From Octopus bimaculoides (lineage: Eukaryota), in contig NC_068998.1 in NCBI RefSeq assembly GCF_001194135.2, forward strand, positions 17,396,746 through 17,460,745: a stretch of DNA of 64,000 nt, in the 5' to 3' direction. This document shows, one piece after another, positions 13,845 through 62,398 of this stretch (positions are counted from its first letter, which is position 1; every line of letters begins with the position of its first letter). The position numbers and the translations under genes are program-made. The notes below the pieces were generated by a model that had not been told where the DNA came from, did not search any database, and saw only the letters and a program-made list of their open reading frames with translations.

Positions 13845-13911
13845 TTTTTTCTTTCTATTCTAGGTAAGTGTAAAGAAAGATCTTTTATAAATTCAGCTTC
13901 TAAAGGTAATA
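13845..13911 (+). other. Candidate recursive splice site with 42-nt RS-exon
   Basis: ttttttctttctattctAG|GTAAGT at 13863/13864, and a second donor AAG|gtaata after 13905. Confidence 0.5.
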
Positions 13912-16408
13912 TTTGATTTTTCTATTCAAAACTATGATTTATTTTGAAATTAAATTTATCATTAGTTAATAACAGCCTATTTTTATATATATATATTTTA
14001 AGTCATACTTTCTGCTAAGGAGTGTAAAGTTAATAGAACAGTTATCTTAAAGTATTTAGTTTCAATTCTGTATGTTTTAAGTTTAAATCTTGTTAGAGTA
14101 GACCTTTCTTTCGACACTTAGGTGTTACTATAAAATTGTATTACAGTGGAGCTTATTCAATTTGCTGGGGGTCTTCTTTTCTCTCTTGTGTAAAAAAAAT
14201 TAAGTGGAGTTTTTTTATTAACCAAAATAGATTAAATGTAAGTTTAAAATTATTTTCATAATACTTCAGCTTATTGCTAACTGCTGAACCTGTTTATTAC
14301 TAAAGTTTTATTTTGAATCATTGGAAGTAGTATTTTATTGTTTAATAAACAATACAGAATAGAACAGTTATTTTGATTGTTTTGTATTTTCAGTCCCTCA
14401 TCTTTTGATAAGTTTAAGATTATATTCATCTTCAGATTATATCAATTTTCAGCTGTTATTTCACCTCAGGTCATCTCTGATTTGTTGTCAGGTCAGGATG
14501 GAAACCTGCCACTAGTAACCATGTAATTCAGTACTAGATATTCATTGTTGAATGGTTGGCAACTAAACTCAAGTACCCAGCATAATTAAAAAAGCAAAAC
14601 TTGTCAAAGGCAGATGAATTTCTTGAGAACCAACAACATTCATCTCTTGGGGAGGAGATAGATGGGTACTATGAGGATTATTTTGCTCAGCGAAATAATT
14701 GGATGAAATATTTAATTCTATACTGAACCAGTTAGGGCCAAGATTGATGATAGCCACATAAAACCTAAGAGGATGGAAAAGGGGTTGGTTGAAAATTTCA
14801 GGTATCCCAACAGCATTCCTGATTGAGCAGATCTATGATTAAAGGCTCCATATCTTGAACCATCTTGATCCTTTTTCTGTTTAGGACTTTACTGTCTGAT
14901 GTATCCTTCTTCAAGATGTCAGTATTTGATTTCAGGGATATTTCAGTTCCTGTCATTGACCTTTTTGGCAGTGTTGTTATGTAAGTAATACACAATTCAA
15001 AATATCTTGTTTTTGTGTGATGGGAGGTTTTACAACACTTGATAAGATTTGAAATGATTATTAGTGGTTAAAAACCACTCTACTAGGAAGTTGTTAATTC
15101 AGTATACAATCTTAACATAAAATTATTGAGGGATTCAACCATTCCTCTAAAAGAATAATGAATTTACCAGAAAAATATTGGGCTGGAATTTGCTGAAGAA
15201 TATTGTTAAATGTTTATTATTTGCAGGATGAAATTTACCAAAATGCAGATGATTTATAGAGCTTTAGATGCACAACAAACCTAGAGCAAAGATTGACTTT
15301 TATCAAGTTGCAGTCTATCTAAGTAGAATTAGATGATATTGACAGTAGAGAAGTGTTAAAAGAAATACAATGAAGTTTTGGTTTTTGTCAAGATGCAACT
15401 CCACCGTCAGTTATATTTTCTTGAAGAACAGACAGTTTTACTTTGTTGATTTACAAAACACTTTTGATAGGCTTCTAATTTCTGCAATCTAGTCATAATG
15501 GAGATAACTAGGTATGGAAAAGAGCTATCTTGTAGGGAAACCATAATCTATACACAAGTAAATCATGATCAGCAGGAATGTGCAAGACATTTTAAGAGTT
15601 CACTAACTCTCAGATAAATCTCTAGAAGTTTTTTCTCTCCTTAAAGCTGTTCTTGTAAAAAATAGGATTGTGAACCATAAAAATACTGTGTAGAAATGAT
15701 CTAAGAAAGAATTTTATTTTATCTATACCTTTTAATACAGGTTTTACTCAATTTGTAAGAGTTACATCCTATTGAATAGCTCACAATAGTATCTGTATTT
15801 TATTGAGCCTGGAGAAATGGAAAACAAAATTTAATTGCAGAAGCAATTTTAGCTGGAATTAATGCAGTACCAAACTAAATAATGTAAAATGTGTCCAAAG
15901 AGGAATATCATTTAAGGAATCTTGGATAGTAAATATATTTATAAATCTCTTTATACTGGACAGTTCTAACAAGTATTTTAGTGATTTTTACTAACCATTT
16001 TAAACTCACAGGAAGAGTTGAGTTGTTATTGTTTAGCCTCGAAATAGACTTTGGTTGAGCATGTCTATGATCAAAAGCATTCTGGGTATGACTCTCCCAA
16101 ATTTTTCAGGTCTAATATACCTTAAATAGCACTATTCAGTTTGTCCTTTCTTAAGATGTTAGGAAATAATTTAAGTGCAATTTGATTGTTTTTTCTAGTC
16201 AATTAAGCAACCACATTGTTGCTCCCTTGTTTAGGAGTTGAGTGATTTAATCAGTAGAATAAAGTTTTATAAACTTGTTGACCTTTAAGCACACTGCATT
16301 TTCTCTAGAATTGTTTCCCCTGTCACTGCCCTGTTACTACAGAGGAGAAAACTCATACAGTAACACGATGCACCTACAGTGTGCTAAAGGTTAAACCTAA
16401 AATTACAA

Positions 16409-17052
16409 TTACTTGTTACCTTTGCTGGCGACAGAGTTACTCTCTCTCTCTGAGTAGAGGACAGATTGGTTGATATTTGTGCCTAAAGTACAGTGCTGCA
16501 TGGTAGTGGAACACAGGCTTTGAATATGGAAGACATAGGAGGGTTGAAAAGAAATGAAGTGAGTATACTCTGCTGGATTAGTGTAAGTGTGCATGAACAA
16601 ATGAGTTGAGAAAAATTGTACATAAGTGAAATCAGATATTGTGTGCAAAAAGTAAAGTTGTTATATGAGCTTGCAATGCATAAAATTGTTTAATGCTCTA
16701 CACGGACAAAAGAAGGCTGAAAAAAACATGGAAAGAATTTAAGACCAGTGTTAGGAAGATGTCAAAAAGCCATAAGTAGTGAAACAGTGTGATGGAAAAA
16801 AAACGTGTTGAATGGAGACAGCTTGGGTAGAGTAGTCTCTTTAGTCTTGCCTAGGACAAGACAACCTCTAGTGCCATGATAAAATGCACTGGTATTCTCT
16901 GTAAAGTAGTTGGCTATACGGAGGGAATCTAGCTGTAGAAACCATGTCAAAAATTAGATATATGAGTGAGATATAGTTCCTAACTCATTTACAAGGGTAA
17001 TGATTCCAAATAGACTATGATGATTCAGCTAACTCATGCCAGCATGGAAAAG
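16409..17052 (+). mobile_element. RTE-clade LINE 3' fragment (ORF2 C-terminus and 3' tail)
   Basis: Translation LLPLLATELLSL*VEDRL..ICA*STVLHGSGTQALNMEDIGGLKRNEVSILCWISVSVH matches the RTE pattern LLPLL...SLRVKGRLY.ACV..MLHGSETW...LERNE.SMLRW. It ends in the shared tail catgccagcatggaaa. Confidence 0.8.
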
Positions 17053-17139
17053 CAAAGAAATATAACCAGGAATAATTGTCTTTAATTTCATTAACAGAAT
17101 TAGATGAGCCAACAAAGGAGCTTGAACAAGTCAGTCAAA

Positions 17140-17305
17140 CTACTAGAAACAGCAAAATCTCCCTCAAATCAGTCTCCTGTCTTGAGAACTTAAGTATTGT
17201 CATTCAACATCCACTATGCTTGAAAATATGAGATTCTCATGACTAGAATACTTCTCATCATGGATCTACTAGATCGGGGCTGACCTGGGGTTAAACAACA
17301 ACAAA
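17140..17305 (+). mobile_element. Decayed copy of the 2605-type SINE-like repeat
   Basis: Contains ctagaaacagcaaaatctccctcaaatc and ggggctgacctggggttaaacaacaac. Confidence 0.6.
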
Positions 17306-17643
17306 CATCATATATGAAATTAACCTAGTTACTGATGAACATTTTTTTTACTCAATGCTTAATAATATGCTTTCATCTTATTTCTTATGATAAAACTAAT
17401 AATAATAATAATAATAATAATAAAAGTTCCTAAAGCATAAAATAGGAAGCGTCATTAAATAAACACCAGCTAATAATTTCTTCATAAATTCCCATGAATT
17501 TTTCATATGAATTGAACGTGTTTCAGAAGATGTATAATTTCACTACGCATATTGATTATTATATATTTTTTTAAAAAATATTTTCTTCATTTTTATTCCG
17601 ATAAATTAAACAATTTATTTAATTAAATTCTTGGAATAGCAGC

Positions 17644-17677
<34 letters not shown>

Positions 17678-17944
17678 TGGCAATAGTGAACACCTAAGAA
17701 TACTGTAGACTTTTTGAGAAGTGAATTGTTGAAGTTTAGCTTCAGTGGTTAAAATAAGTAGATTTTTATTCTGATGCATTAATTCAAAATGTGTTTGGCT
17801 GATTAGTTAAGGTATTTTTTGTCTTCTATTTTGTAATTTTAAAAGAATTCATTTTGAATTTAAGTTTTATTCCATTCTTTTGGAACACTACTTTATTTCC
17901 AAGTTCAATTTTAAGCTCTTGTTCTCATTCTTGCTGTCATTTTT

Positions 17945-18710
17945 CTCCTGTATCTGTCTTATTTTCTCTCTCACTCTCTCCTTTCCTCCTCTCTCTCACT
18001 ATCCCTCCTTTCCCTCCTCTCTCCCTTTCCCTCCTTTCCTCCTCTCTCCCTTTCTCTCCTTTCCTCCCCCTCTCTTTCTCTACTTTCCTCCTCTCTCTTT
18101 CTCTCCTCTCCTTTCCTCCTCTCTCTTTCTCTCCTCTCCTTTCCTCCTCTCCTTTCCTCCTCTCTTTTTCTCTCCTTTCCTTCTCCCTCCTTTCCTCCTC
18201 CCTCCTTTCCGTCTCCCTCCTTTCTTTCTCCTCTTCCTCCTCTCCTCCATCATCTCCCCTTCCTCTCCCTCTTCTTTCCTTTCTCTCCACACCTTTCTCG
18301 CTTTCTCCATGCCTCTCTCTCTCTCTCTCTCTCCATGCCTCTCTCTCTCTCTCTCTCTCTCTCCATGCCTCTCTCTCTCTCCATGCCTCTCTCTCTCTCC
18401 ATGCCTCTCTCTTTCTCCATGCCTCTCTCTCTCTCTCCATACCTTTCTCTCTCTCCATGCCTGTTTCTCTCTCTCTCTCTCTCTACTCCTTTCTCTTTTC
18501 CATCATTCTCTCCTTTTTCAACTTTCTCTTTTCCTCTTTCTCTCCTTTCTCTTTCTCCTCTTTCTCTCTTTTTCCCCTCTCTCTCTTTTTCCACTATCTC
18601 TTTCCACCTTTCCTTCCCTTTCTTCTCTCTTCCTCTTTCTCTCTCATCCTCTTTTTTCCTTCTCCCCCTCTCCTTCCTTTATATGCTTTCTTTCTGTTCT
18701 TCCCTCTCCG
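17945..18710. repeat. About 760-bp homopyrimidine/homopurine low-complexity tract with an internal CCATGCC(TC)n minisatellite
   Basis: The plus strand is almost only C and T. About 8 CCATRCC units separated by (CT)n runs lie at 18307-18461. Confidence 0.95.
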
Positions 18711-19654
18711 CATGAAATATTATTCTCTTTTCAGCTTATTTGTATGGCAAATGAATTTCTTACCTTGATACTTAAAGTTAGTACTCAGTAACTTTCTCCT
18801 TATTTTTTTCAAAGAACAAACAAAGAAACATAAATAATCCACCTGCAAGTTCAATTTGAAACCATTTTATGTTTTGAACACTTCATTAAGTAAATTAAAA
18901 TAATGCATAATTGAAGGTTGTTTATAGGAGAGTTTTTAAATTTCCTTTTCTCTCCTGTTAAACATTACCAAGCCATTTGCATTATATTTCATTTTAATTA
19001 AGACTGAGATTTAAAAAAAAAAGTATATTTCTCATCCCAATTAACTATTTTCTTCATAACTTTTTATCTTTCAGTAAATGTCTAAGAATTTAAATTATTG
19101 ATCATGGTCTTTTACACAACATGAAACTTTGTATTTCTAAGGTAGATTAAAATGTAATTTTTCTTAGGATATTAAGTGAAATAGGTCTTGGTTCTTTATA
19201 GCTATGTACTGGATTTAGTTCATTGAAAAATTATGCATCATTACCTGTAGAATTAATTAGAATTGATAAAAGGATTTTAATGTAGACTTTTGGGGAAAGT
19301 AGAATTTTTGTTTTTTTTAAATGACATGGTTTTTAACAATTAATCCTTTATAATTTCTTGGGTAGGAGGTTGGGCAGTCCCATTAGAATTTTTCAGGTCT
19401 AAGATAAGTTAAATCGGTAAAAAAAGTCAATATTTTTCTTTAGCTTCTTTCATTGCAAAACTAAAAATGGAACATTTATCATTGTCAATTTTCTTCCGAA
19501 TAAAATATAATGCTGTCTGAAAATTTGTTGTCTTTTTGTATTAAATGACCCTCAAGAATTTTTGTGATTTGGTGTTAAACTTTTACATATGTGGATAGGA
19601 TATGAATTTAGATATTAATATATTGCACAAGTCAATGTTATTGAAGTTACAGAT

Positions 19655-19855
19655 TGGCTTGAAAATTTTACAGTTTCACTATTTGGTTGCTTTCAGAGTT
19701 ATGGTTCTTGTGTTCAGAATTAGAACGGAAGGTTTAAGTATTGCATTAACAGTTAAAGCAACTTAACCACTAATGCAATACTCAAAACTTCCTTTTAACC
19801 ACAGTTCTGAAAGCAATCAAACACAGTGAAACCCTGCAATTTTCTAACCAAGCCA
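19655..19855. mobile_element. Small fold-back (MITE-like) element with a central 66-nt hairpin
   Basis: Outer arms gtttcactatttggttgctttcagagttatggtt and aaccacagttctgaaagcaatcaaacacagtgaaac. Inner arms ggaaggtttaagtattgcatta and taatgcaatactcaaaacttcc are 20/22 complementary. Confidence 0.65.
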
Positions 19856-22800
19856 CATTATATAAATACACACACACACACACACACTACTAGCTCTTGC
19901 TGTTTTTCATTATGTTGTTATTTGTAAGTTTTCTCATTGGTTTGTCTAGTATGGTTGGTGATAGTTTAGTGTTATGCATTAAAGAGCATTTCAATAGTTT
20001 ACATATCTGTAACAAAAGTTTCAAAGACATTTTAATATAGTTATAGCAACATTGACCTTGTTTGACAGCTTGTAATGCAGTAGACTTATTGAGTAGCTTG
20101 ATATCGAAAGGATTAGAAGACAAACTAGTAAGATTATCTATTATTACATAAAAATACAAGCTTGTCATCATCTTTCATTTTGTCTTTATAAAGGGCTTTT
20201 AACTCCATAATAGTGAAATATAAAAATCAAAGAGTTAAACTGTTTTTTTTTTTTTTACGTCTATTTCTTTTACTCTTTTATTTCCAACCTGCATTGTGCT
20301 GGTTTTCTAAACAATTTTGATAATTTATTTTTAAATGTCTCTATTAGAATGAAATGTTTCTAAGACAAATTGTATTGTACCCTAGTACTGAAGTAGTTCT
20401 TTATAGAAAAGGATTTTTTTTTCTCCTAATATGGAAATGAAATATAGGTAGAATAAATATAAATTATCAAATTTATCACAATTTTGTACCTATTTTGTCA
20501 TTTCACACAAAATACTTTTACATAGATGACAATTGTTTATCAAAATTGTTTAAATTATATGTAATTAGAGTTGTAAGGTGAAAAAGTTTGCTTTTAAGAA
20601 ATGAAAATAATTTAAGTTATTTGATTACACATCTAAAATTCAGTTACTTTTCAATTAAACTAAGTGTGCATGTTAAAGGAAATTTAAATATTGTATTGTA
20701 TATTAGACTAACTTATTTAAACTTTTCCACTTTTGTTTCTCTAATGTTAGGCTATAAAACTAGAATAAATAATTTCTGTAAACTTGAAGACCAAACATTT
20801 TGTATATTTAATGTTTCTTAGCCTCAGCTCATCCCATATTGGACAGCCACATGAAATTTATTCCAGTTATGATCATCTGTCTTTTTAGGGTTATCTAGAA
20901 TATTATTAGAGATGTCCTTTGCATATGGAATTTGTCTGCTATTTCTTGCTGATTAAGTGATCACTTAGTCACACATATTATAGGATTCTTGAATCAAATT
21001 TTTCACTCATTGATTGTATATATTACATTTAAAACAAAAGTATAACATTTTATTTGAAGACCCTGGCTGCATTTGCTTATGTATCTATCATTCAGTAAAT
21101 TTGAATCAGTTGCCTGTTTCAAAAATATCTTTTGTTAGTTTTGTCTGACTAGTAGTAATTTTAAACTTGTCATGTTTCTTTTAAAAGGTTTTATGTATAT
21201 TGTAATTACTGATATTAAAAAGTTATTTATTTATTTATTTGCAGATGTTTTTCACTTTATGTTTACGTTTCATGACAAGCAATTAAGCTTTGTACAAGAT
21301 AGTAATTGGCAAACATCCTAATTAAAATGCTTTCAACATCTACTGATTATTTTACTTCTCTAGTGTTTTTAATGTCTGGTCAGTGTCACATAATAACAGG
21401 AGTAAGTGATAAGAATGAAAAAATATATTTATCACAAGTTGTAGGGTCTGATTACTTATTTTCATTTATATGCTGTCAATTATGTTTTCTTTGTTAAAAA
21501 GAAAACACTAAAGGAATTTAGGTAACATTGGGATAATGGAGGTCACTCTTATTCTTTACCAAACATTTTATATGGTAATGATTGAAATAGTTATATAGTG
21601 TTATAACTTTTCAAAAAAAAATTATTTGTCTAAGAAAAGTAGTGTCCATAGTGCTTGAATCCTTCCCAAGACTGGTAAGTTTGTTCAGCTTATGCAGGTC
21701 AACATTTGGGAGGCAGTATGTAGGCTGTGTTTTGAGTAGGCTTTTAAAGGATGGTATTTAGTGGGTCAGAGAAAGGGTTTAGTTAAGGGTAGCACATATC
21801 CAGAAAAATTTAATGGTGCAAATATTGTTGTGGTTGTTGTATGTTGAATTTCTCTGCCTTCTGTCATAAAAAAAGTAGGTTCCACAATATTTATTTGGTG
21901 GCTGCACCATTTCAGATACCCAAACAGTGCTTTTAGTACAGATGATGCACTTGTCTCTTTGGAATAATAAAGCTGAATTTATTTCTTAAAATTTGAAAAA
22001 TCTCTCTGTTAGTGAGCAATGAGATTAATTGTGTTTGAGAATGCAGTGAATGTAATTTTAGGAAAGAATCTTTGATTTTCTCTGCTTTTAAATCTTGCAT
22101 TTAAGTTTGTCTATTCTTTCTGATCACTTATTGGTCTCCATTGACCTCTTAATCTCTAAATCTTACTTTCATGCTATATTTATAATTTGATAATGTGACA
22201 GTTGTAACAACTAGATCTGATCTCTAAGAAGCATTATTTTGATAGCTAGCATATATCCAGAGGCAAAGGTTTAATGTAATAATCAGAAGTAATGTAAAGC
22301 AGTGTCCTTGTTCTTTGAATTAATTGATGGTTGTGGTACTTTAACGAACTGCAAAAGTACTGATGAACTGTACTCTATCAGTGATTTGACATAGATTTCA
22401 ATAAAATGCTAATTTTTTTTCCCCCATTAGTTTTCTTTTAACTAAAGAAAAAATCTATTAACTCAGTTAGCTTAATTCAATTTAAAGAAACTGTTTTGTC
22501 ATTTGTTATTCAAGTTTTTGTGAACTATTCTGGTGACATATTATTGTAAACTTGAGCTACATCACGGTCTAATCTGCTGTTTTATTCAAATGATGTACTT
22601 TAATGCAAAACAAATACAGTTCAATATAATACATTGTACTGGTTTACAGAAGTTATTCTATGCCAGCAAAAATAAATAGTTAAAGAAAATAGTCATCTGT
22701 ATAAGGCTTGTTTTAGTTTTCCCTGTATATTCCACATTCCCTTCTATACATTGATAACCTATCTGTATACATCTTTTATGTAGATGAAATAGCCTTTCAC

Positions 22801-24810
22801 TTGTTTTGCAGACAGTCTGTTGCCTGCTTTGACATCACTGCCACCTGCTTTTAGGTGTCTTTAATAAAGTATATTCTGCTGCCATCTTTCAGAATATCTC
22901 CAATTTAAGGATACCTTCTTTCTATCTCCCATCAATCTCACAGGCTTCATAATGTGTTATTGGCACTGCCTTTCCTCCCAGTAAAAAAGATTAAAAAAAA
23001 ACATTTACAACCTAAATAACTGGTGCCAAACATACACCACCTTCCATATACAGAAGAGACCTTGAAAACTTCATTCAGGAAATGCTAATCTAGTTTCCTT
23101 CAACAACACCATGATGCAATCATTTCACAATTCAAAGAAGCAATGTTACAGTACCATGCATTCTGCACTCTTGAACAGTACACAGTTAAATATTCACTGT
23201 GATTATAAATGGTAAGCTTTAAAATCTCCAGTCACATATCTGTAACATTGTGAAAACAGTATCCCAAAAGTTCAGACTCTTCAAGGCCATAAAATGCTTC
23301 AGCCTTTATCTTTCACCAAGTATCTACAAAGAGCAAATGCTAACCATATTAGAGTACTATTTACATATTTAATATGCTGCTATTTGTGCACAGACAAGTA
23401 TATTAGGCTACATTAAAAAAAAAAACAATAATACCAAAGGCTTTTATGTAGTCCACAAATGCTCTTTCTTCTTGCTATCTCTTTTACGATTACTATAGTG
23501 GCTTCTGCACACTGCCTCTAACAAAGTACTCCCAGTGCATAACCCTCTTCTCTCTTTGACATCTCTACTCTGTGTTTCTCCTTAAATTCTGCACTGAACA
23601 TTATGTTACTCAGAATTTCAGATGTCTGGAACACCTTTCTTGCACATAATTTCCCCACATTAATATAGGCAACCCAAAAACCGCTCACTAATTTGAGAGT
23701 GTCTGCAAAGGTCATGAGTTCTAACTCGATGACGATGATGGTAATAATAATAATAAAACTTTACAAAGATTGGTACTTACCATAATAGTTAGTATTTGTT
23801 ATTTCCTTTGCCACTTGTTGCAAAAGCCATTCAGTGATTACAAATTTTCTGCTTTTGCAGCACAGGGAGAAGCAGACAGAACTAGGCACAGAAGGTGACT
23901 GCCATTATTACTACCAGCACCAGCACCAGCACCACTATTTAGAAATAAAAATGTCAATGATTTTAGCATTTTATTTGTTTTTTGTTTAAAATAGAAAGAT
24001 AGTTTGTTAGGTTATTTTTTAAAACTTAACTATAATAGTTGTATTTTTCATACTGATATAAAGAAAAATTTTGGAATTTGGTATTGATCCAAGAACAAAT
24101 ATGGTTTTTGAAACTTTTAAGTATTAGAAATGATAAGAACTATAGTATATAAAAATCTTAATTCTAAAGTTTGATCCCTTTTATATTTTCCATTTTTCTT
24201 ATTTCTTTTCTTATTACACATTCTTTTCTCTTTCCTTTTATAGATCATATGGCTTTTTGTGAGAGTAGTTGTTTTTATCTGAATGCTAACTAATCAAGTG
24301 TAAAAAAGAAGTGGTACTGTCACTTAGGCAAACTGGAACAAACAAAGGTAAGGGAAGACAAATGTTTTTAGTTGGAGTTATGAACTCTTTTTCAACAGGA
24401 AGTTTAAAAACATTTGTCTCCCCTTACACACACTTCCTGTTTTGACAGCACACTTCCTGCTTAACACAAACTTTTAACTCCTTTTTTTTAAACCTAACAC
24501 AACTCTCAATTCTCATGCATCCTTATTTTTCCAATCATTATATACATGAATTACCATTGAACTTCAAAAGCTCAAAGACAATATAATGTATTGGTATATT
24601 TATTTTTTTATATATTATTTTCTTTATTTTTGTACTTCTTTGTAAAAAACATTTTCATTCTCCCTCTTCTTGAAAATTTGCTTCGCAATGAAAGCCGGTT
24701 AGAGAAATCTTTATTAAAATATGCTTCCAGTTTAGCATTCTGCCTTATTCTTATTTTTCATTTTCCTATTATTTCTCCGTGTGGTTAACACAACCCCACT
24801 ATTTACTGAC

Positions 24811-51900: not shown

Positions 51901-51914
51901 GAAATTACCAAATA

Positions 51915-52270: not shown

Positions 52271-52689
52271 CATTTAGCAATTTCATTTGTCATTAGTTTT
52301 CTCCTTGCTAGAGCTTAAAGAATCATAAAGGGCCAACATTGCATTTTATGTACTTTGAAGTTTGTTTATTCAACTGCAAATGACAGTAAGTTATATCACA
52401 ATTATTTCAGTAATGTTTTAATGCATACCTTGTATATTCACTAAAATATCAAATGAAGTATTTCATGTCTTTACTGATGAAATGTTTTCATACTTCAGTA
52501 ATTTTTTTAACTAAAAATATTTAACATAGTTTAGTGATACTCTCATGAAATGTAATATTAAAATTCATGTATTGAATATGCTTTTCTCTTTAAAGTTTAG
52601 TTTGAGTAGAGATGAAATGTTTTGATTAGACATAACGATTATATTTAATGAGTTCTTAGTCAACTTGTAGATGTTTATGACAGCAGCTG

Positions 52690-52870
52690 AGCATTAGAAG
52701 TATTGGTAATTTTTGGGAAAGGTATCTGTGCTGCTACAGACATGTTAGGAAAGATGAAAAAGTAAACAACTATAACTGATGTAGACATACTAAGGAAGAC
52801 CTAGAAAAAACTGGTTAGGTCAGATCTGAGAATGTTATGTATCTCAGATAAATTGGTTTGGTCACAGTAA
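52690..52870 (+). mobile_element. Very old RTE ORF2 C-terminal remnant
   Basis: ggaagacctagaaaaaactgg reads GRPRK.W, followed by an SDLRML-like segment. Confidence 0.45.
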
Positions 52871-53014
52871 GAATTTTGCTAACATATTTCTAATAAAATA
52901 TACTGCAGATGCTTCAAACTTGGAAATGAAATTTTAAGAGAATTTAGTAAAGTATCTTTTTCAATTTATATAAAGAGAAACACTGCCCTCCATATAGTTT
53001 TCCTAAATAAAATA

Positions 53015-53290
53015 TATTTATATCTGTTTTCCATGTTTCCATGATAACATGGATTGGACAGGCCATCATGACCAACTGGCATATATTTTGAAGGTGCTAC
53101 TTGCCACGATGAGTTGAGGACCTCATCTTGCATTTCATTTTTGGCTTGGTACTTTATGCTCTTCCTAAGATCAACCATTTTACAGAGTGTGCTGGATGCA
53201 TTTTTTAAGGCATCAGCTCTATAGTAACACATCTACTGAGACCCCACAACCCATGTCTTTGCTCACTCATCAGCTTCTTTACACAGTTTA
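53015..53290 (-). mobile_element. Old RTE 3' end
   Basis: The minus strand ends in ctgtccaatccatg...catggaaaacagat, a variant of the shared tail. Confidence 0.5.
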
Positions 53291-53454
53291 GTCATGATCA
53301 TCCTATCTCTTTTTTTTTCTTTTTGTATATTTGCAATTGCTCAGAATATCCTTTTAGTTGATAGGTTGTGATTTGAGGGAGATTTGGCTGCTATTGTAAG
53401 ATATTTTGTTGAACACTAACACCAACTGGTAGGGGGGGGAGGACTCTTTCACTG

Positions 53455-53526
53455 TGAATTTCATTTCTTCACAGGTAACCTGTATAAGAAGGAGTGTGCA
53501 GTATCAATTACTTAAGGACGGTGAGA
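53455..53526 (+). other. Candidate recursive splice site with 46-nt RS-exon
   Basis: ttcatttcttcacAG|GTAACC at 53474/53475, and a second donor ACG|gtgaga after 53520. Confidence 0.35.
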
Positions 53527-56500
53527 GAGGAACGGCTTGACAGGTTTCAGTTGCATATATTGATATTACATGAACTTCAAAAGATATTAAGCTAGTGTTT
53601 GGAACATGACTTAAAAGGTTCTTATATAAAACTATGATAAGACTAGAGAAGGTATCAGGCAAGTTAGTACTAGAAGGGTGAAACTCATGTTAGCACGGAA
53701 TGGTATTGAAAAATCTTTTATACTACAAAGGAAACCTTAATAAGCACATTCTACAAAAAAAAAAAAAAGAAACAAAACTGAAACAAAAAAGAAAAACCTA
53801 GACAACAGCTGTTCTGTTTCAAAGTGTTAAACTACATGAAACAATTTAGTTATCTCAAACTAGGTGTCATGAATTCTAACAGCTTGTACAAGTTTGCTGA
53901 ATTCACTTTTAATGAGTGTAAAATGTAACAAAAGCCATATAATAGAAGTTGCTTGAATTTAATAGTTGGCTATTTTGTTCTGTTTCATAATCAACATTTA
54001 CGTTTTTAAACTTTATTTCTTTATCAATTAGATATCCTTCTTTTATACCATATATATTTTTTTTTTTATAATTCTAGATTTGCTAAATTAAAGCAATTGA
54101 ATTTATTTTATCCTAAAGATTTAATCTTTTCCCAGAGATTAAAGATTCTTTTTATTAAGTTCTTTTCTTTAAAACATGTAAGTTATTAAATATCAAAGAT
54201 TGATTTTTTTAAACTCATTTACAATATGTTATGAAAAATGTATTTCTCTTGGAGTCATTTATATTAGTCAAATCATTTGCAGCTGTGTTCTATTGCGTTT
54301 TAATAAATTATGTTCCTATCGATGATTTAGTATATAAATTCTTTGAAATTTGTTATTAACTTTAACTCAGAAAACAGCTCTTTTGGTTAGACACAAAGCT
54401 AGTTTATGTAGGAGATAGGTAGTTGATCATAAACCAGTTCTAATATCACAAGTTATTTTATATTATTGGGTTGCCTTCAGTAGGATTTGAACCAACAACA
54501 GAAATGTACTTTGGTACTAATTTTAGCCTTTATTTCAGCATATTACGTCTTCCTCTCCCTCTGCCACTTGTAGAAAGTAAACTTTAAGAATATTCATTGA
54601 TTAATAGTTTTAGTTGTGGTTTAGAGCAAATATTATCTTTAATTTTGAAAGTTTAACAAGTAGTAAATTATATTAAACTAAATTAAGATATTTACTCAAA
54701 TCATCTAATTAATTACAAATTTGCTGCTTTTGACATAATTTCATGTTTTTTCATTCAAATTCCTTCATTCAAATGCATCCTTCATAGTAACAATTATCTG
54801 TAATTGTCTTCAATTAATCCTCTTCCTAGCTTTACAGTCTTTTTTCTTTTGATTATTTGCAATCTACCTAAGAAGTTTTAGTCTTTATAGTTTACAATTC
54901 TTCTCATGCCCTTTATCTGTTATTGATCATATTTATACAATTAAGAAATAACAGTGCATATAATCTGGATATTGAAAATTTTAATTTTTTTTTCCCTTCT
55001 TGCAAATTTCAACATGTACTTCATGAGTCACTAATACTGAATGCTAAATTGTATAACATAATAACTTTAGAAGATACCATTTCTGCATATAAGAAAGTCT
55101 TAAAAGTAAATATTCATATATTTACCTACATACCTTTACCTTTGTTGAATTTTAATAATGTCTTTTATTTTTGGTTTCATACTAAGTAAAATGAACTTTC
55201 CTTTCAGTATTTTAAAAATGGTTTATTTCCATTTTTAACATCAAAGGGTTTAAATTTGGTGATTAAGAAACATTTAAAGGTTAGCTAACATTATTCTTTG
55301 GTTAAGTATACAAAGAAGAAAAGTCAATGTTTCTGACTTACTAGTCATCATCAGTAGAAATGTAACATATTGTTATTATTTATTGGCACTGTAGCACCTA
55401 GCTTCATATATAAAGAATGTTCATAATAAATACTGAAATGTGTTGGGAAACAAGCATAATGTATAATTTAATTATAAAAGGACATTGACCACATACTGAA
55501 TTAAATTATCCATTAAGTTCATTATTTTTGTTGCTCATGTACATGGAAGATCAAATTTGTTGATTTATCATTTTTAAGCATTTGTAGATCATTGCAGAAC
55601 AAGAAATTTCAGCAACTATATGAAAATATATATGGTGTAGGTATATGATGAAGTTTGCTTTGCAGTTATTTATTTCACGGTATTGAGCCGACTGTGGTAC
55701 TTTGAAGAAGTGTTTCAGCCATAGCCGTGGGTTGACCTAAACCTTATAAGTGAAATTAGAGAAAATTATGTTGAAGTCCATTGGATGAAGTGTACCTATT
55801 CTTGAATGGTAGACTTATTGCATTTCTTGGTTTAACATCATAACTTGTTTCTTGGGTGCCTGTTTCAAGTATTTGGGCCAGGTCCTACTCACCTGGCACA
55901 TAGGACCTTAGGATAACCTAGGTGTTGTAAGTTTTCCATTCTTTCCTCCAACAACCTTGAAGACCATACAAAGTGTCATGCTTGCTGACTTACCTCTGAC
56001 TAAAATATTAAAAGATATTGACAATTATTGCATAATTCTTTTCTGTATAACCCATAAGTAGTTGTCATATTCTTGCCCTTATTTATGTTTTCTTTTTTTT
56101 TTTTTTTTGAATTTATTCTTTACCAACTATTTTCATATTGTGGTAACTGAAGTAATTACGAAAAGTGTAAATGGTTGTAGATTGTAATCACTTATTTTAG
56201 TAGTCAGAAAGAAAAAAAAAAGAGTTGACTTTAACAAATTTTTATGTTAAATACTCAGTAATGTTAGTATATGCTTTAATGGTTTTTTGAAGATAGATAT
56301 TTCACTGAATTGTTTTTGGTTTTTTCATATATTGTGACACATGTTAAATTAACAGTTCATATAAAATTTATATCTGTAAATATATCTGTAAACCTATTTT
56401 ACTATTTTACTTTATATCTCTTTCATACTATTCCTCAATGCATGTACAACATTATCAACATTTCTAGTAAACATTTATGTAACTGTATTTCTATTGAAAT

Positions 56501-57267
56501 ACACTGCCCGCCCCTCCACTTTTTTTTTACTTGTTTGATATTTGACTGCAGCCATGCTGGAGCACCACCTTTGTTTGAGTTTATTTTGAAAATAATTAAG
56601 AATTTAGTGAAATATCTTTGTCATTAAAGCTGGGCTTTAGAACATATGAAACTTTTAGGAAAAGTTTAATTTTGATCACTTGAAAATAAGAAGTCTGTAT
56701 TATAGAACTAGGGCAATCTTAGGTGGTTGGATATCTAAAAGTTAAATTTCTTCTGGACGTTTGAAGTATGCAACGGTTTTTAATTTAGCAAGAAAAGAAC
56801 AAAACTACTTGTTTCATTAAATAACAGAGTATATACTAGTTACTTCGCATCTTTGGCAGTTATGAATTTTAAAATGCATTATCATAAAAACTTCCTTCGT
56901 GTGTAAAATACATCTATTTAGGTCATATATTTTAAAAACTGAAATATTTTATGTAATACAGTAGCTTTTTTTGGACAAAGCCTACTGATGTTTTTACACT
57001 GTGTTTAGTATAGAACTATGCTGCAATAATAAAAAAAAGGCTTTATTCAAAATTTTGTTCATAAATCAATCGATCTCAATAATCACATTCTTAAAGACAT
57101 CTGCATTTTAACAAAAAAGTAGTGTTAGAAGTTGTATAAGGGTTAATTGTTACATGTTATATAAAACTTATTTGTGTGCTGTGCACACCATACATTACAG
57201 ATTTATATTTTCAGTTTTGAAATATAGTTTTCACAGAGTGTGGTAATACACACGTTCATTGTATTAG

Positions 57268-57326
57268 NNNNNNNNNNNNNNNNNNNNNNNNNNNNNNNNN
57301 NNNNNNNNNNNNNNNNNNNNNNNNNN
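57268..57326. other. Assembly gap whose flanks overlap by about 42 bp
   Basis: agttttcacagagtgtggtaatacacacgttcattgtattag occurs on both sides of the Ns. Confidence 0.95.
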
Positions 57327-57394
57327 AGTTTTCACAGAGTGTGGTAATACACACGTTCATTGTATTAGTGATAAGATCTCAGCAGAATCTCAAA

Positions 57395-57630
57395 GTTTGT
57401 TCAAGAAAGAAACACCCATTTCCACCAAAGCTTGTTAAGTTCTGTAAAATCATTTATTGCAGTCAATGTGATCAGCGCAAAATCATTTTTCTCCCTCATT
57501 GTACTGGCTTTTGCTCTCTTTACATTGTTTTTTCCTGCATTCAATTGGCAAACCAAATTTTTATAATGGCGCATTGCCAGCTTAATTGTCACTTTTATTG
57601 CATGGACACACCCAGGAATTTACATTTGGG
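57395..57630 (-). mobile_element. Old CR1/L2-like RT C-terminal relic
   Basis: KFLGVSMQ*K*QLSWQ resembles KFLGV.LD.KL.W..HI, and a later tgg tgg aaa corresponds to W.G. Confidence 0.35.
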
Positions 57631-58730
57631 ATATTCTTCTTTTAGATATTCTTAATTTAAAAAGTATTTGCTGGCTCACTTGTTTCTTCAATTATTTCAT
57701 CCTAAGGCACCCCTCCCTCAACATTGGCATACTGTTTTCCATTTGAAACCATTTAGAAATGGGTGGGTGATATTCCCAGCTCTGATAAATACATATTTAT
57801 GCAGGCAATGTAAACATTGTTAATATTGAATTGACAAGATCTCTGAAAATTCTGAAAGAAAATTTCTCCTTCACCTTTTAACATTTCTCACTTCTTTGAC
57901 ATTTCTTTCTCTTTGACTTGTTCACTCTTTCTGACTAGTCCTCTCTATATATTTCTCTTCTACTCTGTCATCCTCTTTCTCACTCTATCTATCTATCTCC
58001 ATCCCCCCACACTCTATTTTCCTTTCTCTCTCTCTCCCCCTATCTTATTATCATATATATAATTAGTTATATGTTTCATAGTGGATGGAACCTCAGAAGT
58101 AAAATTCCAAGTAAGGTGTATACCACTGGCTACTCTTCAGTCCAAGGATATCTTGATTAAATTAAAGGTTACATTGTCGCACAGATGTACGTGTTGATGC
58201 ATGGAAGATCCAATCAGAGTGTGTGGAGAGCACAGTCTGATACAGGGTATATAAATGTGGGGAGAAATAAGTATTTGAATAACAGAACAAGAAGGAAATA
58301 TAAGGGAGTGAGAGAAAGGATGAATTTAAGCAAGGTCAGCTGACTAGTATTAACACTTCCTTCATGTGTAAAATACATCTATTTAGGTCATATATTTTAA
58401 AAACTGAAATATTTTATGTAATACAGTAGCTTTTTTTGGACAAAGCCTACTGATTTTTTACACTGTGTTTAGTATAGAACAATGCTGCAATAATAAAAAA
58501 AGGCTTTATTCAAAATTTTGTTCATAAATCAATCGATCTCAATAATCACATTCTTAAAGACATCTGCATTTTAACAAAAAAGTAGTGTTAGAAGTTGTAT
58601 AAGGGTTAAGTTTTACATGTTATATGAAACTTATTTGTGTGCTGTGCACACCATACATTACAGATTTATATTTTCAGTCCTGAAATATAGTTTTCACAGA
58701 GTGTGGTAATACACACGTTCATTGTATTAG

Positions 58731-59257
58731 NNNNNNNNNNNNNNNNNNNNNNNNNNNNNNNNNNNNNNNNNNNNNNNNNNNNNNNNNNNNNNNNNNNNNN
58801 NNNNNNNNNNNNNNNNNNNNNNNNNNNNNNNNNNNNNNNNNNNNNNNNNNNNNNNNNNNNNNNNNNNNNNNNNNNNNNNNNNNNNNNNNNNNNNNNNNNN
58901 NNNNNNNNNNNNNNNNNNNNNNNNNNNNNNNNNNNNNNNNNNNNNNNNNNNNNNNNNNNNNNNNNNNNNNNNNNNNNNNNNNNNNNNNNNNNNNNNNNNN
59001 NNNNNNNNNNNNNNNNNNNNNNNNNNNNNNNNNNNNNNNNNNNNNNNNNNNNNNNNNNNNNNNNNNNNNNNNNNNNNNNNNNNNNNNNNNNNNNNNNNNN
59101 NNNNNNNNNNNNNNNNNNNNNNNNNNNNNNNNNNNNNNNNNNNNNNNNNNNNNNNNNNNNNNNNNNNNNNNNNNNNNNNNNNNNNNNNNNNNNNNNNNNN
59201 NNNNNNNNNNNNNNNNNNNNNNNNNNNNNNNNNNNNNNNNNNNNNNNNNNNNNNNNN
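58731..59257. other. Assembly gap
   Basis: N run. Confidence 0.99.
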
Positions 59258-59729
59258 ATATATATATATATATATATATAGCAACATCCATGCTTAAGCA
59301 AATGATATAACCGTTTCATTTCTCTGTGACCTTCCCTAACCATGCATCACCCACAAGCCTAGGTACCACATGCCAAACCTACATTGATTGTATAGTCAGA
59401 TACTTTGAGAGCATTTTCCAATAGGGTTAAACTAGCCTTGTCTCTTTTTAACATTTCAAGTCCTACTCATGTCAGAAAAACATCACTGCACCATACTCCC
59501 TCTAAAGATGAACAGAACTCAGCTTATACCTTCCATGTAGGTGTTGACTTGCAACAGTTTATACAGAACATTTAACAACATCAATCTCACCAATCTCAGA
59601 GAGCTTGCAAGGATCATTGTTCTCTGACCTTCATTCAAACTCGGCAAGTTAAAAAATTTTTTTTTAATCTTTAGATTCACTGATTCTGTCATCTCATACT
59701 GATACACAACTGAGTGGCTTCTTTTGAAT

Positions 59730-59830
59730 GCTTTCCAAATTCCATCCACAAGGCTTTGCCCAAGGTACTGCACAGTGGGACCAAACCAGAAACTATGTGG
59801 TTGTGAAGCAAACTTCTTTTCCATAAGCAA
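59730..59830 (-). mobile_element. SINE head fragment (first family)
   Basis: ccacaaggctttgcccaaggtactgcacagtgggaccaaaccagaaactatgtggttg is the reverse complement of the tRNA-derived head. Confidence 0.65.
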
Positions 59831-60121
59831 CACAACAGCTGGTGGAAATTGTACTGCACCAAACAAAATGCTCTTGCAGCATTTAGTTACATTCCTTTAT
59901 TCTTTGAGTTCAAATACTGCTACAGTCAACTTAGCCTTTCTCCCTCTGAGTTCAATTGCAATAGTATCCTTATTATACTGAAAGTCAATATCTCTTTCTC
60001 TCCAGATTTTTGGTTTTGTACTGATGGAAGAAATCATTATTTTCCAATAAAGTGTAGGGGACGGTGGAATTTGTGTTGAGTTGGACAAAATATTTCTGCA
60101 GTTTTTTTTTTTTTATGTATT

Positions 60122-60250
60122 GAGTTAAAATTCCTTCAGAATTGACTTTGCCTTTATTCATCATGGGGTTGATAAAATAAATATGGGTCTACAGTGGGTT
60201 CCAATTAAACTGAAATCTTTTCCGCCAAAATTTGTGATCTTGTGCCGACA
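60122..60250 (+). mobile_element. Decayed SINE (second family)
   Basis: gagttaaaattcc..agaattgactttgcctttattcatc.tggggttgataaaat...aaaatttgtgatcttgtgcc. Confidence 0.6.
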
Positions 60251-61499
60251 AAAAGTTCCACAATGTAAAAAAAATATCTGCTTTTTTGGATTAATGATCA
60301 TTAATTGTTCAGTTTTCATTTTGTTTAGAAATTGTAAATTTTTCTCTCTACAATTACAAATGCTTTCTCATGTAATTTTGTAAAAAGAAGTAATATTTTC
60401 ATTGATGCTCAATTAATTGGTTAATGACATGGAAAAATTCAATTTTGAAATCTATAAATTATAATTTAGATTTCATGCATAGCTAATATTTAATAAATTG
60501 GAGCAATTTAATGGGATATCTAGTGCTAAAAAAAGTTCTGTAACCACTGTTTCAGGCCTTGTATTGTTCAAAATTTTTCTGTGTAGAAGTCTTTTTTTTC
60601 CTCCTTCTAAATTTTAACCCAAGCTTTAATTAGGAATAATGTTGCAAAATAATGGAATATATTATAAAATGTCCAATATAATTATTGCTATCTAGTGAAT
60701 GATTTGGTTTTCCTTCCAGTGTAGTTGAAGATACTATTGCTATAAGGAACACTAAATTATAATAATTAAAAAATTGAATTTTTTTAGCACTATTACATTG
60801 AAGTTATTTCTCTTGAGGTTGTTCACTGGAGATCTATAGTCAATTCACGGAGATGAAAATGACCTTTCGTAATATCAAGGTTCAGTTGTTTAACTGCTAC
60901 AATTTTGTGGAATTGTGTGTTGCAGAATTTGTGTGGCCATCAAACAATGAGGCAGTGATGCAAATTTTTGCACTAAAAAAGATTTAGCTTTTCACTATTA
61001 CTCCTTCATTTCTCAAGCGCTTTCATTATAAAGCAGCAGCACAGCATATAAATATATTGTAGTCATACAGATGGAGATATTCTCCCATGAATTAATCTAG
61101 TTACTTTGATTTGAAGAACAGAATTTTCCACAGAATTTTCAGTGTTGTTGAAAAGATATCTAACTTTTTGGATTGCTGTCACTTTTTTGTATGTTGTAGT
61201 TTTCTGTGAACTAACAATCTTATCGTTTAGTGTACTGCAGTGGTGGCTTGATAATTTCAAGTTTGTCATTGTAAAGATAGTTCAAATACTTGATACTTCA
61301 ATACTAAGGACAGTGCAGTTTTATTGTCGTCACTTTACTAGAATAAATATTGCTTGCAGGAAATTCTTGTGGAAATACCAGGTTTTATAAATTTTCTTGT
61401 ATTTGAATGTACAAATTTATATATCTTCATGACATTATTTCATTTTGTTAGTTTTTTATGATAAAGGATTAGACAATAGATTGATGTTAACAAAGAATT

Positions 61500-62005
61500 A
61501 TGATTTAGGTAACTTAGAGTATTAATACAAGGTAATAAATTCTGGTTTTCTCTAGTTGTAAGGTGATCTATCAGTCTATTGTACCATTCAACTAATGGCT
61601 GACTTTGATTGTTTCTTACAACCTTGACATATCTGTCAACTAAATATTGTTGGCTTTCCTGATCTATAAAGGACATTGAAGCCACCTCTATGTGCAAGAT
61701 TATTGTAATAGAACTGTTGTACAGCCATCTTATTGTAAACACGAGCTTGTTGTTCTTTAACATGTTGCTGATCACTGTGCTGTTTAAGCTCTCTGTTGGG
61801 GAATAAGAGAGTAACATTGGCTAAAAACAGCAAGATAAACAGATCCTTGTCAGTGCTATATTTCTGGGATGATTTGTTTTTTTTTTCTTTTTCAGGAACT
61901 AAATTTTCACCAATAAACAGAGCAGTGATTTTTATTATTTATAAGAAAATTGTATCACCTGATGTCAGGACCTTGTTTGAGCTGCAGTTCATATTTGCAT
62001 TTAAG
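61500..62005 (-). mobile_element. Helitron Rep/Hel fragment (region N-terminal to the HUH motifs)
   Basis: Frameshifted translation gives GPDIR*YN, ALFIGENLVP, LLFPNRE...HSDQQHV, QFYYNNLAHRGGFNVLYRSGK and QQYLVDRYVKV..RNNQSQPLVEWYNRLIDHL. These match the Helitron pattern D.RRYN, AAVF.GE, YPLLFP.GE.GWH, YRLA.R..F..L..SG.LFQQY.VD.YVK..RL.Y.R.NQ..LR.E.Y.GL.D. Confidence 0.8.
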
Positions 62006-62043
62006 CTACATATTAACTGCAGTTTACATTTACATTTTACCTA

Positions 62044-62095
62044 GTCCAACCCATGCCAACATGGAAAATGATGTTAAAGGGTGATAATGATGATG
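62044..62095 (+). mobile_element. RTE-type 3' tail fragment
   Basis: gtccaacccatgccaacatggaaaatgatgttaaag..gataatgatgatg. Confidence 0.7.
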
Positions 62096-62340
62096 TTATC
62101 AGTTCTTATTGAATGTGCCTGTTTTTATAACTCTACTAAAAACATTTTTTATATCTAACTCAGTATATGAATTATGAAATGTAATTTCTTGTTTTATGCT
62201 TACCACATAAGGCAAACCATCTGAATTTTGAGATGTTTTAAATTTTCACTAGCATCAGTAATACAAGTTGGCCTATGTGTTGGGTGATTATTTGCATGTA
62301 CAGAGTAGTAGAATGGTATGTTTGTCCTTGAATTCTAGAA

Positions 62341-62398
62341 CTTTATTTTTTTTTTGCAGGTGAGTAATTTTTACACCAACTGAAGCAAAAAGGTAACT
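62341..62398 (+). other. Candidate recursive splice site with 33-nt RS-exon
   Basis: ctttattttttttttgcAG|GTGAGT at 62359/62360, and a second donor AAG|gtaact after 62392. The exon has stops in all three frames. Confidence 0.55.

What the first reader, a model, noticed from the sequence alone, without database searches (positions are those of the whole stretch)
13845..62398. Candidate recursive-splicing system in a giant plus-strand intron
Seen: at 13863, 53474 and 62359 (weaker at 46877) a polypyrimidine tract plus YAG is fused directly to a 5' splice-site consensus. The three main sites each have a second donor 42, 46 and 33 nt downstream. None lies in a recognised repeat. I found no equally strong motif on the minus strand, and no conventional coding exons lie between the sites. 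Known: Drosophila ratchet points and vertebrate RS-sites have this AG|GT fusion plus a short cryptic RS-exon needed for exon definition, often with premature stops, in very long (often neuronal) introns. Inference: an octopod host gene removes this intron stepwise. I am not aware of this being described in cephalopods, but I cannot search.
Basis: partly seen in the sequence, partly recalled or inferred. Interest (0 to 1): 0.8.

Follow-up and report, generated by a model that had tools for sequence, protein, structure and literature searches.

The report
Two candidate recursive splice sites, octopus
Two of the four flagged spots in this exon-free stretch of octopus DNA look like recursive splice sites more closely than chance predicts, but no RNA, host-gene or cross-species evidence could be obtained, so stepwise intron removal remains an untested candidate.

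Summary
All four motifs and all three "second donors" are at the stated coordinates. Only two sites exceed chance: 13863 (ttttttctttctattctag|GTAAGT) and 62359 (tttatttttttttttgcag|GTGAGT). They are the two best of 186 plus-strand AG|GT junctions, and nothing on the minus strand comes close. Each has a weaker donor 42 or 33 nt downstream. Sites this strong with such a donor are expected 0.02-0.03 times per window; two are seen, and 0 of 900 Markov simulations reached two.

Site 53474 scores no better than minus-strand sites, and its downstream donor is stronger than its own. That predicts exon inclusion, not recursion. Site 46877 has a poor donor (GTTTGT) and no second donor.

The window is exon-free as far as homology can show. 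It shares mariner and SINE-like repeats with three Octopus genomes. T exceeds A on the plus strand in 26 of 27 2-kb bins from 10 to 64 kb, which fits plus-strand transcription.

No host gene, RNA evidence or orthologous sequence could be reached. The assembly gaps do not touch the sites.

Verdict: this is a reasonable but unproven two-site candidate for recursive splicing, not a four-site system. I put about 0.4 on recursive use. If true, it would add a new lineage to a known mechanism.

The parts
13844..13863 (+). Acceptor half of candidate site A: pyrimidine tract plus TAG (attttttctttctattctag), with TT at -5/-6
   Evidence: sequence. Acceptor PWM 4.3 and combined score 8.9, second best of 186 plus-strand AG|GT.
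13864..13905 (+). Candidate RS-exon A, 42 nt, starting with the regenerable donor GTAAGT. Stops in 2 of 3 frames; purine fraction 0.57.
13906..13911 (+). Downstream donor of unit A (AAG|GTAATA), weaker than the GTAAGT at 13864
   Evidence: score 1.1 against 6.3. Chance of an equal or better donor at +25..+60 is 0.09-0.14.
62340..62359 (+). Acceptor half of candidate site B: actttattttttttttgcag, with TT at -5/-6
   Evidence: Acceptor 6.0 and combined score 11.6, best in the window on either strand.
62360..62392 (+). Candidate RS-exon B, 33 nt, starting with GTGAGT. Stop codons in all three frames.
62393..62398 (+). Downstream donor of unit B (AAG|GTAACT), weaker than the GTGAGT at 62360
   Evidence: 3.8 against 10.0. 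Chance 0.02-0.05.
53455..53526 (+). Exon-like unit C: moderate acceptor (ttcatttcttcacag), weak regenerable donor GTAACC, 46-nt body, strong downstream donor ACG|GTGAGA. It reads as a cryptic or cassette (frameshifting) exon rather than a ratchet point. Its RS score is at chance level.
   Evidence: (score 3.4, matched by minus-strand sites). C, not T, at -5.
46857..46882 (+). Strong acceptor-like tract (tttttttttttcag) followed by the non-consensus GTTTGT. No downstream donor within 80 nt. Not a credible recursive site.
10001..64000 (+). Domain of sustained T>A strand asymmetry (about +0.08; 26 of 27 2-kb bins positive). Indirect evidence for plus-strand transcription across both strong sites.
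   Evidence: Other Octopus loci fluctuate around zero.

Best explanation
Sites 13863 and 62359 are spliceosome-recognised units in a long plus-strand transcript of an Octopus gene. Each is a strong 3' splice site fused to a strong 5' splice site, followed by a 42- or 33-nt cryptic exon closed by a weaker donor.

The inferred mechanism follows Drosophila ratchet points and vertebrate RS-exons. The short unit is first recognised by exon definition. The upstream exon is spliced to 13864 or 62360, which rebuilds a GTAAGT or GTGAGT donor at the junction. That donor out-competes the weaker downstream donor, so the cryptic exon is removed with the next intron segment and leaves no trace in the mRNA.

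Shown here: the sequence anatomy, its excess over chance, its strand specificity, the donor strength order and the stop-codon content. Inferred: that the region is an intron, that it is transcribed from the plus strand, and that the sites are used. Sites 53474 and 46877 are not part of the system on present evidence.
For: - The two sites are the top two of 186 plus-strand AG|GT junctions and exceed every minus-strand site.
- Two sites this strong are expected 0.13-0.35 times per window. None reaching 8.9 occurs in 201 kb of other Octopus strand-sequence.
- Both have a downstream donor at an RS-exon-like distance. The composite expectation is 0.02-0.03 against 2 observed, and 0 of 900 simulations reached 2.
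- The regenerated donor is stronger than the downstream donor at both sites, as in fly ratchet points (PMC8605326).
- TT at -5/-6 is present at both, as in 99.5% of fly ratchet points (10.1101/006163).
- The cryptic exons carry stops in 2 of 3 and 3 of 3 frames.
- The sites are not in any detectable repeat and are not homologous to each other.
- There are no coding exons around them.
- The plus-strand T>A skew over 54 kb fits sense-strand transcription. That T>A marks the sense strand of introns is established for other animals and is my own knowledge, not calibrated in Octopus.
Against: - There is no RNA evidence, no conservation data and no identified host gene or flanking exon.
- The statistics are post hoc on a window that was flagged because it looked like this. 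At about 3-5e-4 per window, some 15-20 such double hits are expected by chance in a 2.7-Gb genome.
- The splice PWMs are approximate human-derived frequencies recalled from memory, not Octopus-trained and not MaxEnt.
- Branch-point evidence is inconclusive. At both sites an upstream AG lies 21 nt before the acceptor, and the only YTNAY matches sit at -36 and -14.
- In mouse brain, recursive splicing is very rare: 19 sites, under 0.06% of long introns. Most AGGT junction candidates there were unannotated exons (PMC8797253). The base rate in a new lineage is therefore unknown.
- The one annotated Octopus gene stretch available showed no T>A skew, so the strand inference is uncalibrated.
Confidence: 0.4

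Rival explanations
1. Chance. In T-rich, 30%-GC non-coding DNA, pyrimidine runs ending in AG occasionally abut GTRAGT, and a donor-like GT falls nearby. None of the sites is used by the spliceosome.
For: - 53474 and 46877 are fully explained this way.
- YAGGTRAG alone shows no strand bias, 4 against 5.
- Strong donors and acceptors are equally common on both strands.
- The plus-strand T excess alone predicts about twice as many PPT-AG|GT motifs on +.
- Seventeen mini exon-like units occur on + and nine on - at modest thresholds.
- Order-5 Markov gives P = 0.035-0.055 for the motif scores alone.
- The selection effect of a first-stage reader looking for striking motifs applies, and branch-point support is weak.
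Against: - The composite of two top-scoring junctions, each with a suitably placed weaker donor, was reached in 0 of 900 simulations, against an expectation of 0.02-0.03.
- No site reaching 8.9 was found in 201 kb of other Octopus strand-sequence.
- Four of the 17 plus-strand mini-units begin with GT, against 0 of 9 on the minus strand. About 0.9 would be expected if roughly 5% of AG dinucleotides are followed by GT; that fraction is my rough estimate, not a count.
Confidence: 0.35
2. These are ordinary but unannotated small exons of a plus-strand mRNA or lncRNA: alternative, UTR, poison or decoy exons. They appear in mature or NMD-targeted transcripts, and their GT-starting 5' ends are incidental, or they act as 'expressed RS-exons'. 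Unit 53475-53520 fits this reading best.
For: - The acceptor plus 33-46 nt plus donor architecture is that of a micro-exon.
- 13864-13905 is 42 nt and open in one frame.
- At 53474 the downstream donor is the stronger one, the pattern of the 'RS-like cryptic exons' of PMC8797253.
- In mouse, 46 of 84 AGGT junction candidates were unannotated exons.
Against: - 62360-62392 has stops in all frames, and 53475-53520 shifts the frame.
- The 647-aa search query, built from ORFs overlapping or within a few hundred bases of the three main sites, found no protein homolog.
- An exon beginning with exactly GTRAGT is rare unless the donor is functional. At the two strong sites the 5'-end donor is stronger than the downstream one, which in flies leads to skipping.
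Confidence: 0.2
3. The sites belong to an unrecognised interspersed repeat, or are an assembly artefact, and the splice-like motifs were carried in with it.
For: - The window is rich in SINE-like, mariner and LINE-like fragments.
- One gap is spurious, and a 384-nt block is duplicated beside two gaps.
- Only about 110 kb of other Octopus DNA was available for the repeat test.
Against: - The +/-600 nt around each site has no significant match covering the motif, elsewhere in the window or in the other loci.
- The four sites are not alignable to each other.
- The sites lie in contiguous read sequence, away from the gap artefacts.
Confidence: 0.05

Closest known systems
Drosophila intronic ratchet points with cryptic RS-exons (Hatton 1998; Burnette 2005; Duff 2015; Joseph and Lai 2018/2021; Pai 2018)
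   Same: - A long pyrimidine tract with TT at -5/-6, then YAG fused to GTRAGT.
- A short cryptic exon (about 50 nt in flies; 42 and 33 nt here) closed by a weaker donor.
- Cryptic-exon content that is non-coding or carries stops.
- Location in a very long, exon-free stretch.
- More than one site on the same strand, tens of kb apart.
   Different: - The lineage is a cephalopod mollusc. I found no report linking recursive splicing to cephalopods.
- Ultraconservation of the SA|SD core, junction reads, saw-tooth coverage and lariats define fly ratchet points and are untested here.
- The host intron is not identified.
Vertebrate RS-sites and RS-exons in long neuronal genes (Sibley 2015; PMC6110456; PMC8797253)
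   Same: - An AG|GTAAGT-type core with a strong pyrimidine tract.
- An RS-exon used for exon definition, with premature stops.
- Introns over 50 kb.
   Different: - Vertebrate sites are few (19-20 in mouse brain), sit mostly in first or second introns of genes over 294 kb, and are highly conserved.
- None of these properties could be checked here.
'RS-like cryptic exons', poison exons and pseudoexons
   Same: Unit 53475-53520 has an AG|GT 5' end whose regenerated donor is weaker than the downstream donor. Its length shifts the frame and it carries stops. This matches the pattern PMC8797253 describes for RS-like cryptic exons.
   Different: No evidence that it is ever spliced. Its acceptor and combined score are at chance level for this window.

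Membership tests
Intronic ratchet point / zero-nucleotide recursive splice site (Drosophila type) | Juxtaposed strong 3' splice site (pyrimidine tract + YAG) and strong 5' splice site (GTRAGT) at one junction | tested here: met
   Met for 13863 and 62359. Marginal for 53474 (GTAACC, score at chance). Not met for 46877 (GTTTGT).
Intronic ratchet point / zero-nucleotide recursive splice site (Drosophila type) | TT at positions -5/-6 of the acceptor (99.5% of fly ratchet points; 10.1101/006163) | tested here: met
   13863 (ttcTAG), 62359 (ttgCAG) and 46877 have TT. 53474 has T at -6 and C at -5. The feature is fly-specific and its relevance in Octopus is unknown.
Intronic ratchet point / zero-nucleotide recursive splice site (Drosophila type) | Cryptic RS-exon: a downstream donor about 30-60 nt away that is weaker than the regenerated donor | tested here: met
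   13863: +42, 1.1 against 6.3. 62359: +33, 3.8 against 10.0. Not met for 53474, where the order is reversed (6.2 against 4.7). Absent at 46877.
Intronic ratchet point / zero-nucleotide recursive splice site (Drosophila type) | Lies on the sense strand inside a long intron of an expressed gene | tested here: inconclusive
   No exons or host gene were found. A sustained plus-strand T>A skew fits sense-strand transcription but is not calibrated in Octopus.
Intronic ratchet point / zero-nucleotide recursive splice site (Drosophila type) | Evolutionary conservation of the SA|SD core above flanking intron | not testable with these tools
   No cephalopod genome collection can be searched by DNA. ORFs spanning the sites found no orthologous calls in the protein collection.
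Intronic ratchet point / zero-nucleotide recursive splice site (Drosophila type) | RNA evidence: upstream-exon-to-site junction reads, saw-tooth intronic coverage, recursive lariats | not testable with these tools
   No RNA-seq access.
Vertebrate RS-exon (exon-definition-dependent recursive site) | RS-exon carries premature stops or shifts the frame, so that inclusion is non-productive | tested here: met
   62360-62392 has stops in 3 of 3 frames. 13864-13905 has stops in 2 of 3 frames (42 nt, frame-preserving). 53475-53520 is 46 nt, frameshifting, with stops in 2 of 3 frames.
Ordinary cassette or coding micro-exon | Open reading frame with protein-level homology, or presence in mature mRNA | tested here: inconclusive
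   ORFs overlapping or near the sites have no homologs, and 62360-62392 cannot be coding. A non-coding or UTR exon cannot be excluded without transcripts.
Interspersed repeat carrying splice-like motifs | Multiple similar copies of the site and its flanks | tested here: not met
   No copies in the window or in about 110 kb of Octopus DNA, and the sites are mutually non-homologous. The sample is small, so a genome-wide test is still needed.

The most novel reading that the evidence does not exclude
An Octopus gene removes a giant intron (over 50 kb) stepwise at fly-like ratchet points with cryptic RS-exons at 13863 and 62359. This would be the first evidence of recursive splicing in a lophotrochozoan. 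It would imply that the AG|GTRAGT-plus-RS-exon mechanism dates back to the bilaterian ancestor and is used in the very long introns of cephalopod genomes.
Probability: 0.35. Interest if true: 0.5.

Novelty: new member of a known kind. Interest (0 to 1): 0.33.

Why it matters
Recursive splicing is documented in Drosophila and vertebrates. In the held literature I found no report for cephalopods or other molluscs. Cephalopod genomes are large and repeat-rich and have very long, often neuronal, introns, so how those introns are removed accurately is a real question.

A validated pair of ratchet points would extend the mechanism to a third major bilaterian branch. It would also provide a motif definition (PPT-TT-YAG|GTRAGT plus a weaker donor at +30..+60) for a genome-wide scan.

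As it stands this is a sequence-only candidate. The mechanism would be known and the lineage new, so the result is useful but not surprising to a splicing specialist.

Tried and rejected
1. Orthologous or paralogous DNA through the protein collection. A 647-aa query built from ORFs spanning or flanking the three sites gave 5214 word candidates and none at E<=0.001. No conservation test was possible this way.
2. The host gene. A 964-aa query of the longest unexplained ORFs on both strands gave no hits. A splice-aware exon scan found nothing convincing. Pfam found only two mariner fragments.
3. Rfam and tRNA scans for intronic ncRNAs that might reveal the host strand. No hits.
4. Repeat explanation. 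Self-BLAST, BLAST against six fetched loci and direct alignment of the four sites were all negative at the sites.
5. Branch-point and AG-exclusion-zone analysis. Uninformative.
6. Calibrating T>A skew as a sense-strand marker in Octopus. The only annotated gene stretch available, 8.2 kb of a CARD gene in L004, showed about zero skew, so no calibration was obtained.
7. A general strand bias of splice-like signals. Rejected: donors >=6 number 15 against 18, and acceptors >=6 number 20 against 18.
8. Treating 53474 and 46877 as recursive sites. Rejected on score, donor order and the lack of a second donor.

My by-eye reading of 8681-9648(+) and 31842-32111(-) as LINE fragments was not confirmed by Pfam and stays an impression.


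Full report
**What is there.**
- 13863: ttttttctttctattctag|GTAAGT
- 53474: ttcatttcttcacag|GTAACC
- 62359: tttatttttttttttgcag|GTGAGT
- 46877: ttttttttttcag|GTTTGT

The three 'second donors' are also real. They are AAG|GTAATA at 13906 (+42), ACG|GTGAGA at 53521 (+46) and AAG|GTAACT at 62393 (+33). 46877 has no donor-like GT within 80 nt.

**Gaps first, as the scan's program asked.** The N runs at 35234-35833, 37967-38353, 57268-57326 and 58731-59257 lie between the sites, not at them, and the nearest is more than 3 kb from a site. A fifth gap, 62772-63028, starts 413 nt downstream of 62359.
- Gaps 1, 4 and 5 abut (AT)n and gap 2 abuts (CA)n. These are ordinary microsatellite-induced breaks.
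- Gap 57268-57326 is spurious, because the 41 nt before and after it are identical.
- 56884-57267 is 97% identical to 58349-58730, and both blocks end at a gap. This is an assembly artefact or a 1.46-kb tandem duplication.

Reading frame is irrelevant because nothing here is coding. The gaps affect only the 48.5-kb distance between the strong sites and the completeness of the 'no exon' statement.

**Is it more than chance?** The window is 30% GC, and T exceeds A on the plus strand (22875 against 19929).
- Without a pyrimidine tract, YAGGTRAG shows no strand bias: 4 on + and 5 on -.
- I scored every AG|GT junction with a combined acceptor and donor weight matrix. The frequencies are approximate human values recalled from memory, not Octopus-trained.
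- On the plus strand, 62359 (11.6) and 13863 (8.9) stand apart. Then come 46877 (5.4), 14491 (4.2), 53474 (3.4) and 48909 (3.1).
- The best minus-strand sites score 4.9, 3.3 and 3.0.
- Sequences simulated from order-3 and order-5 Markov models of the window give P = 0.025/0.055 for a top score this high. For a second score this high they give P = 0.003/0.035.
- A regex definition (at least 12 of 15 pyrimidines + YAG|GTRAG) gives 2 observed against about 0.1 expected. Looser definitions that let 53474 in are within chance.
- About half of the plus-strand excess of PPT-AG|GT motifs is simply what T>A composition predicts.
- In 201 kb of strand-sequence from other Octopus loci, the best scores were 8.3 and 7.4.
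- Strong donors alone and strong acceptors alone are equally frequent on both strands.

The non-random thing is therefore specifically the coincidence of a strong acceptor and a strong donor at one junction, twice, on one strand.

**The second donors.** A donor at least as good as the observed one within +25..+60 has these chance probabilities, using real positions in the window, AG|GT-matched positions and other Octopus DNA as nulls:
- 13863: 0.09-0.14
- 62359: 0.02-0.05
- 53474: 0.006-0.02

I then set a composite criterion taken from the literature description of ratchet points: RS score >=8.5 plus a donor >=1 within +25..+80. It is met twice on + and never on -. The expectation is 0.022-0.031, and none of 900 simulated windows reached two. 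This is post hoc on a window that was flagged for looking like this. At roughly 3-5e-4 per window, some 15-20 such windows would arise by chance in a 2.7-Gb genome. The result is suggestive, not proof.

**Anatomy against the known systems.**
- Fly ratchet points have a prominent pyrimidine tract, and 99.5% have TT at -5/-6 (10.1101/006163). 13863, 62359 and 46877 have TT; 53474 does not.
- They hide a cryptic RS-exon of about 50 nt whose donor normally loses to the stronger regenerated donor. The content of that exon is poorly conserved and non-productive (PMC8605326).
- At 13863 and 62359 the regenerated donors (GTAAGT, GTGAGT) are stronger than the downstream ones.
- The 33-nt unit has stops in all three frames, and the 42-nt unit has stops in two.
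- At 53474 the order is reversed, 4.7 against 6.2. PMC8797253 reports that pattern for 'RS-like cryptic exons' that are included rather than recursively removed.
- 46877 is only an acceptor-like tract.
- Branch-point inspection was uninformative.

**Context.**
- No host exon could be found. A splice-aware ORF scan gave nothing credible.
- The longest unexplained ORFs and the ORFs around the sites have no homologs among 5.8 billion proteins.
- Pfam sees only two Mos1-type mariner fragments, both on the minus strand: HTH_48 at 11609-12034 and Transposase_1 at 36891-37220.
- Rfam and tRNA scans are empty.
- The mariner ORF's relatives include O. bimaculoides, O. vulgaris and O. sinensis proteins.
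- Loci fetched around those proteins share the mariner at 85% DNA identity over 1.3 kb. They also share two SINE-like families at 75-90%. An Octopus origin is well supported.
- None of these repeats, and no intra-window repeat, covers a candidate site. The four sites are not homologous to each other.
- From 10 kb to the end of the window, T exceeds A in 26 of 27 2-kb bins, with a mean of about +0.08. In the first 10 kb and in the other Octopus loci the skew fluctuates around zero.
- In other animals, sustained T>A marks the sense strand of long introns. That is my own knowledge. I could not calibrate it in Octopus, so it is indirect support for plus-strand transcription, no more.

**Interpretation.** The most likely reading (about 0.4) is that 13863 and 62359 are recursive splice sites with cryptic RS-exons in a long plus-strand intron.
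- The short unit would be recognised by exon definition.
- Splicing of the upstream exon to it would rebuild a strong donor at the junction.
- That donor would out-compete the weaker downstream donor, so nothing remains in the mRNA.

Only the sequence anatomy and its statistics are shown; every RNA-level step is inferred. The rivals are:
- Pure chance, about 0.35.
- Ordinary unannotated small exons, poison exons or decoy exons, about 0.2. This is the better reading for 53475-53520.
- An unrecognised repeat or assembly artefact, about 0.05.

**Novelty and verdict.** The library holds no paper linking recursive splicing with cephalopods or molluscs. The single co-occurrence of the terms is in a reference list. 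If confirmed, this would be a new lineage for a known mechanism, not a new mechanism.

The finding shrinks from a four-site 'system' to two good candidates plus one cryptic-exon-like unit. Its decisive tests lie outside these tools: genome annotation, nascent RNA-seq junctions, saw-tooth coverage and lariats, cross-species alignment, and genome-wide sense/antisense counts.

Noticed in passing
window 57227-57367 and 56884-57267 / 58349-58730: Gap 57268-57326 is a false gap: the 41 nt on either side are identical, so the contig ends overlap and were not merged. Separately, 384 nt ending at gap 3 are 97% identical to the 384 nt ending at gap 4. This suggests an assembly artefact or a tandem duplication of about 1.46 kb.
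   Followed up: partly
window 10001-64000: T>A strand asymmetry is sustained, positive in 26 of 27 2-kb bins with a mean of about +0.08. It is about zero in 1-10000 and in five other Octopus loci. This may mark the body of a plus-strand transcription unit starting near 10 kb. CpG observed/expected is very low throughout (0.06-0.34).
   Followed up: partly
window 10968-12249 (-) and 36547-37502 (-): Two degenerate Mos1-type mariner copies lie on the minus strand (Pfam HTH_48 and Transposase_1). The first is 85% identical over 1.3 kb to an O. bimaculoides copy (L002). Its protein relatives also include Limulus SETMAR-like proteins at 69% identity.
   Followed up: yes
window 3089-3531 (+), 12703-13116 (-), 24806-25074 (-), 30113-30317: Copies of a SINE-like family are present, with internal or terminal (CA)n or (TA)n. 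It also occurs many times in the O. bimaculoides, O. vulgaris and O. sinensis loci at 70-90% identity. The three copies inside the T>A domain share one orientation, and the copy at 3 kb is inverted.
   Followed up: partly
window 32705-33079 and 45676-45902; L004 15115-15751: A second short interspersed repeat family is present. It forms a tandem array of units about 175 nt long in the O. vulgaris locus L004.
   Followed up: no
window 17965-18644 and 27038-27175: There are long TC-rich low-complexity tracts, with periods of 2/18/28/41/72 and a GC skew of -0.44. They create spurious 300-aa ORFs in several frames.
   Followed up: no
window 100-159 (+): A further GT-starting mini-unit: ctcattatacag|GTAGCA with CAG|gtgcag 59 nt downstream. 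Its RS score is weak (1.7). Counting it, 4 of the 17 plus-strand mini exon-like units begin with GT, against 0 of 9 on the minus strand.
   Followed up: partly
window 8681-9648 (+) and 31842-32111 (-): ORFs that by eye resemble LINE reverse-transcriptase and C-terminal motifs. They have no Pfam hit and no homolog in the protein search, so the reading is unconfirmed.
   Followed up: partly
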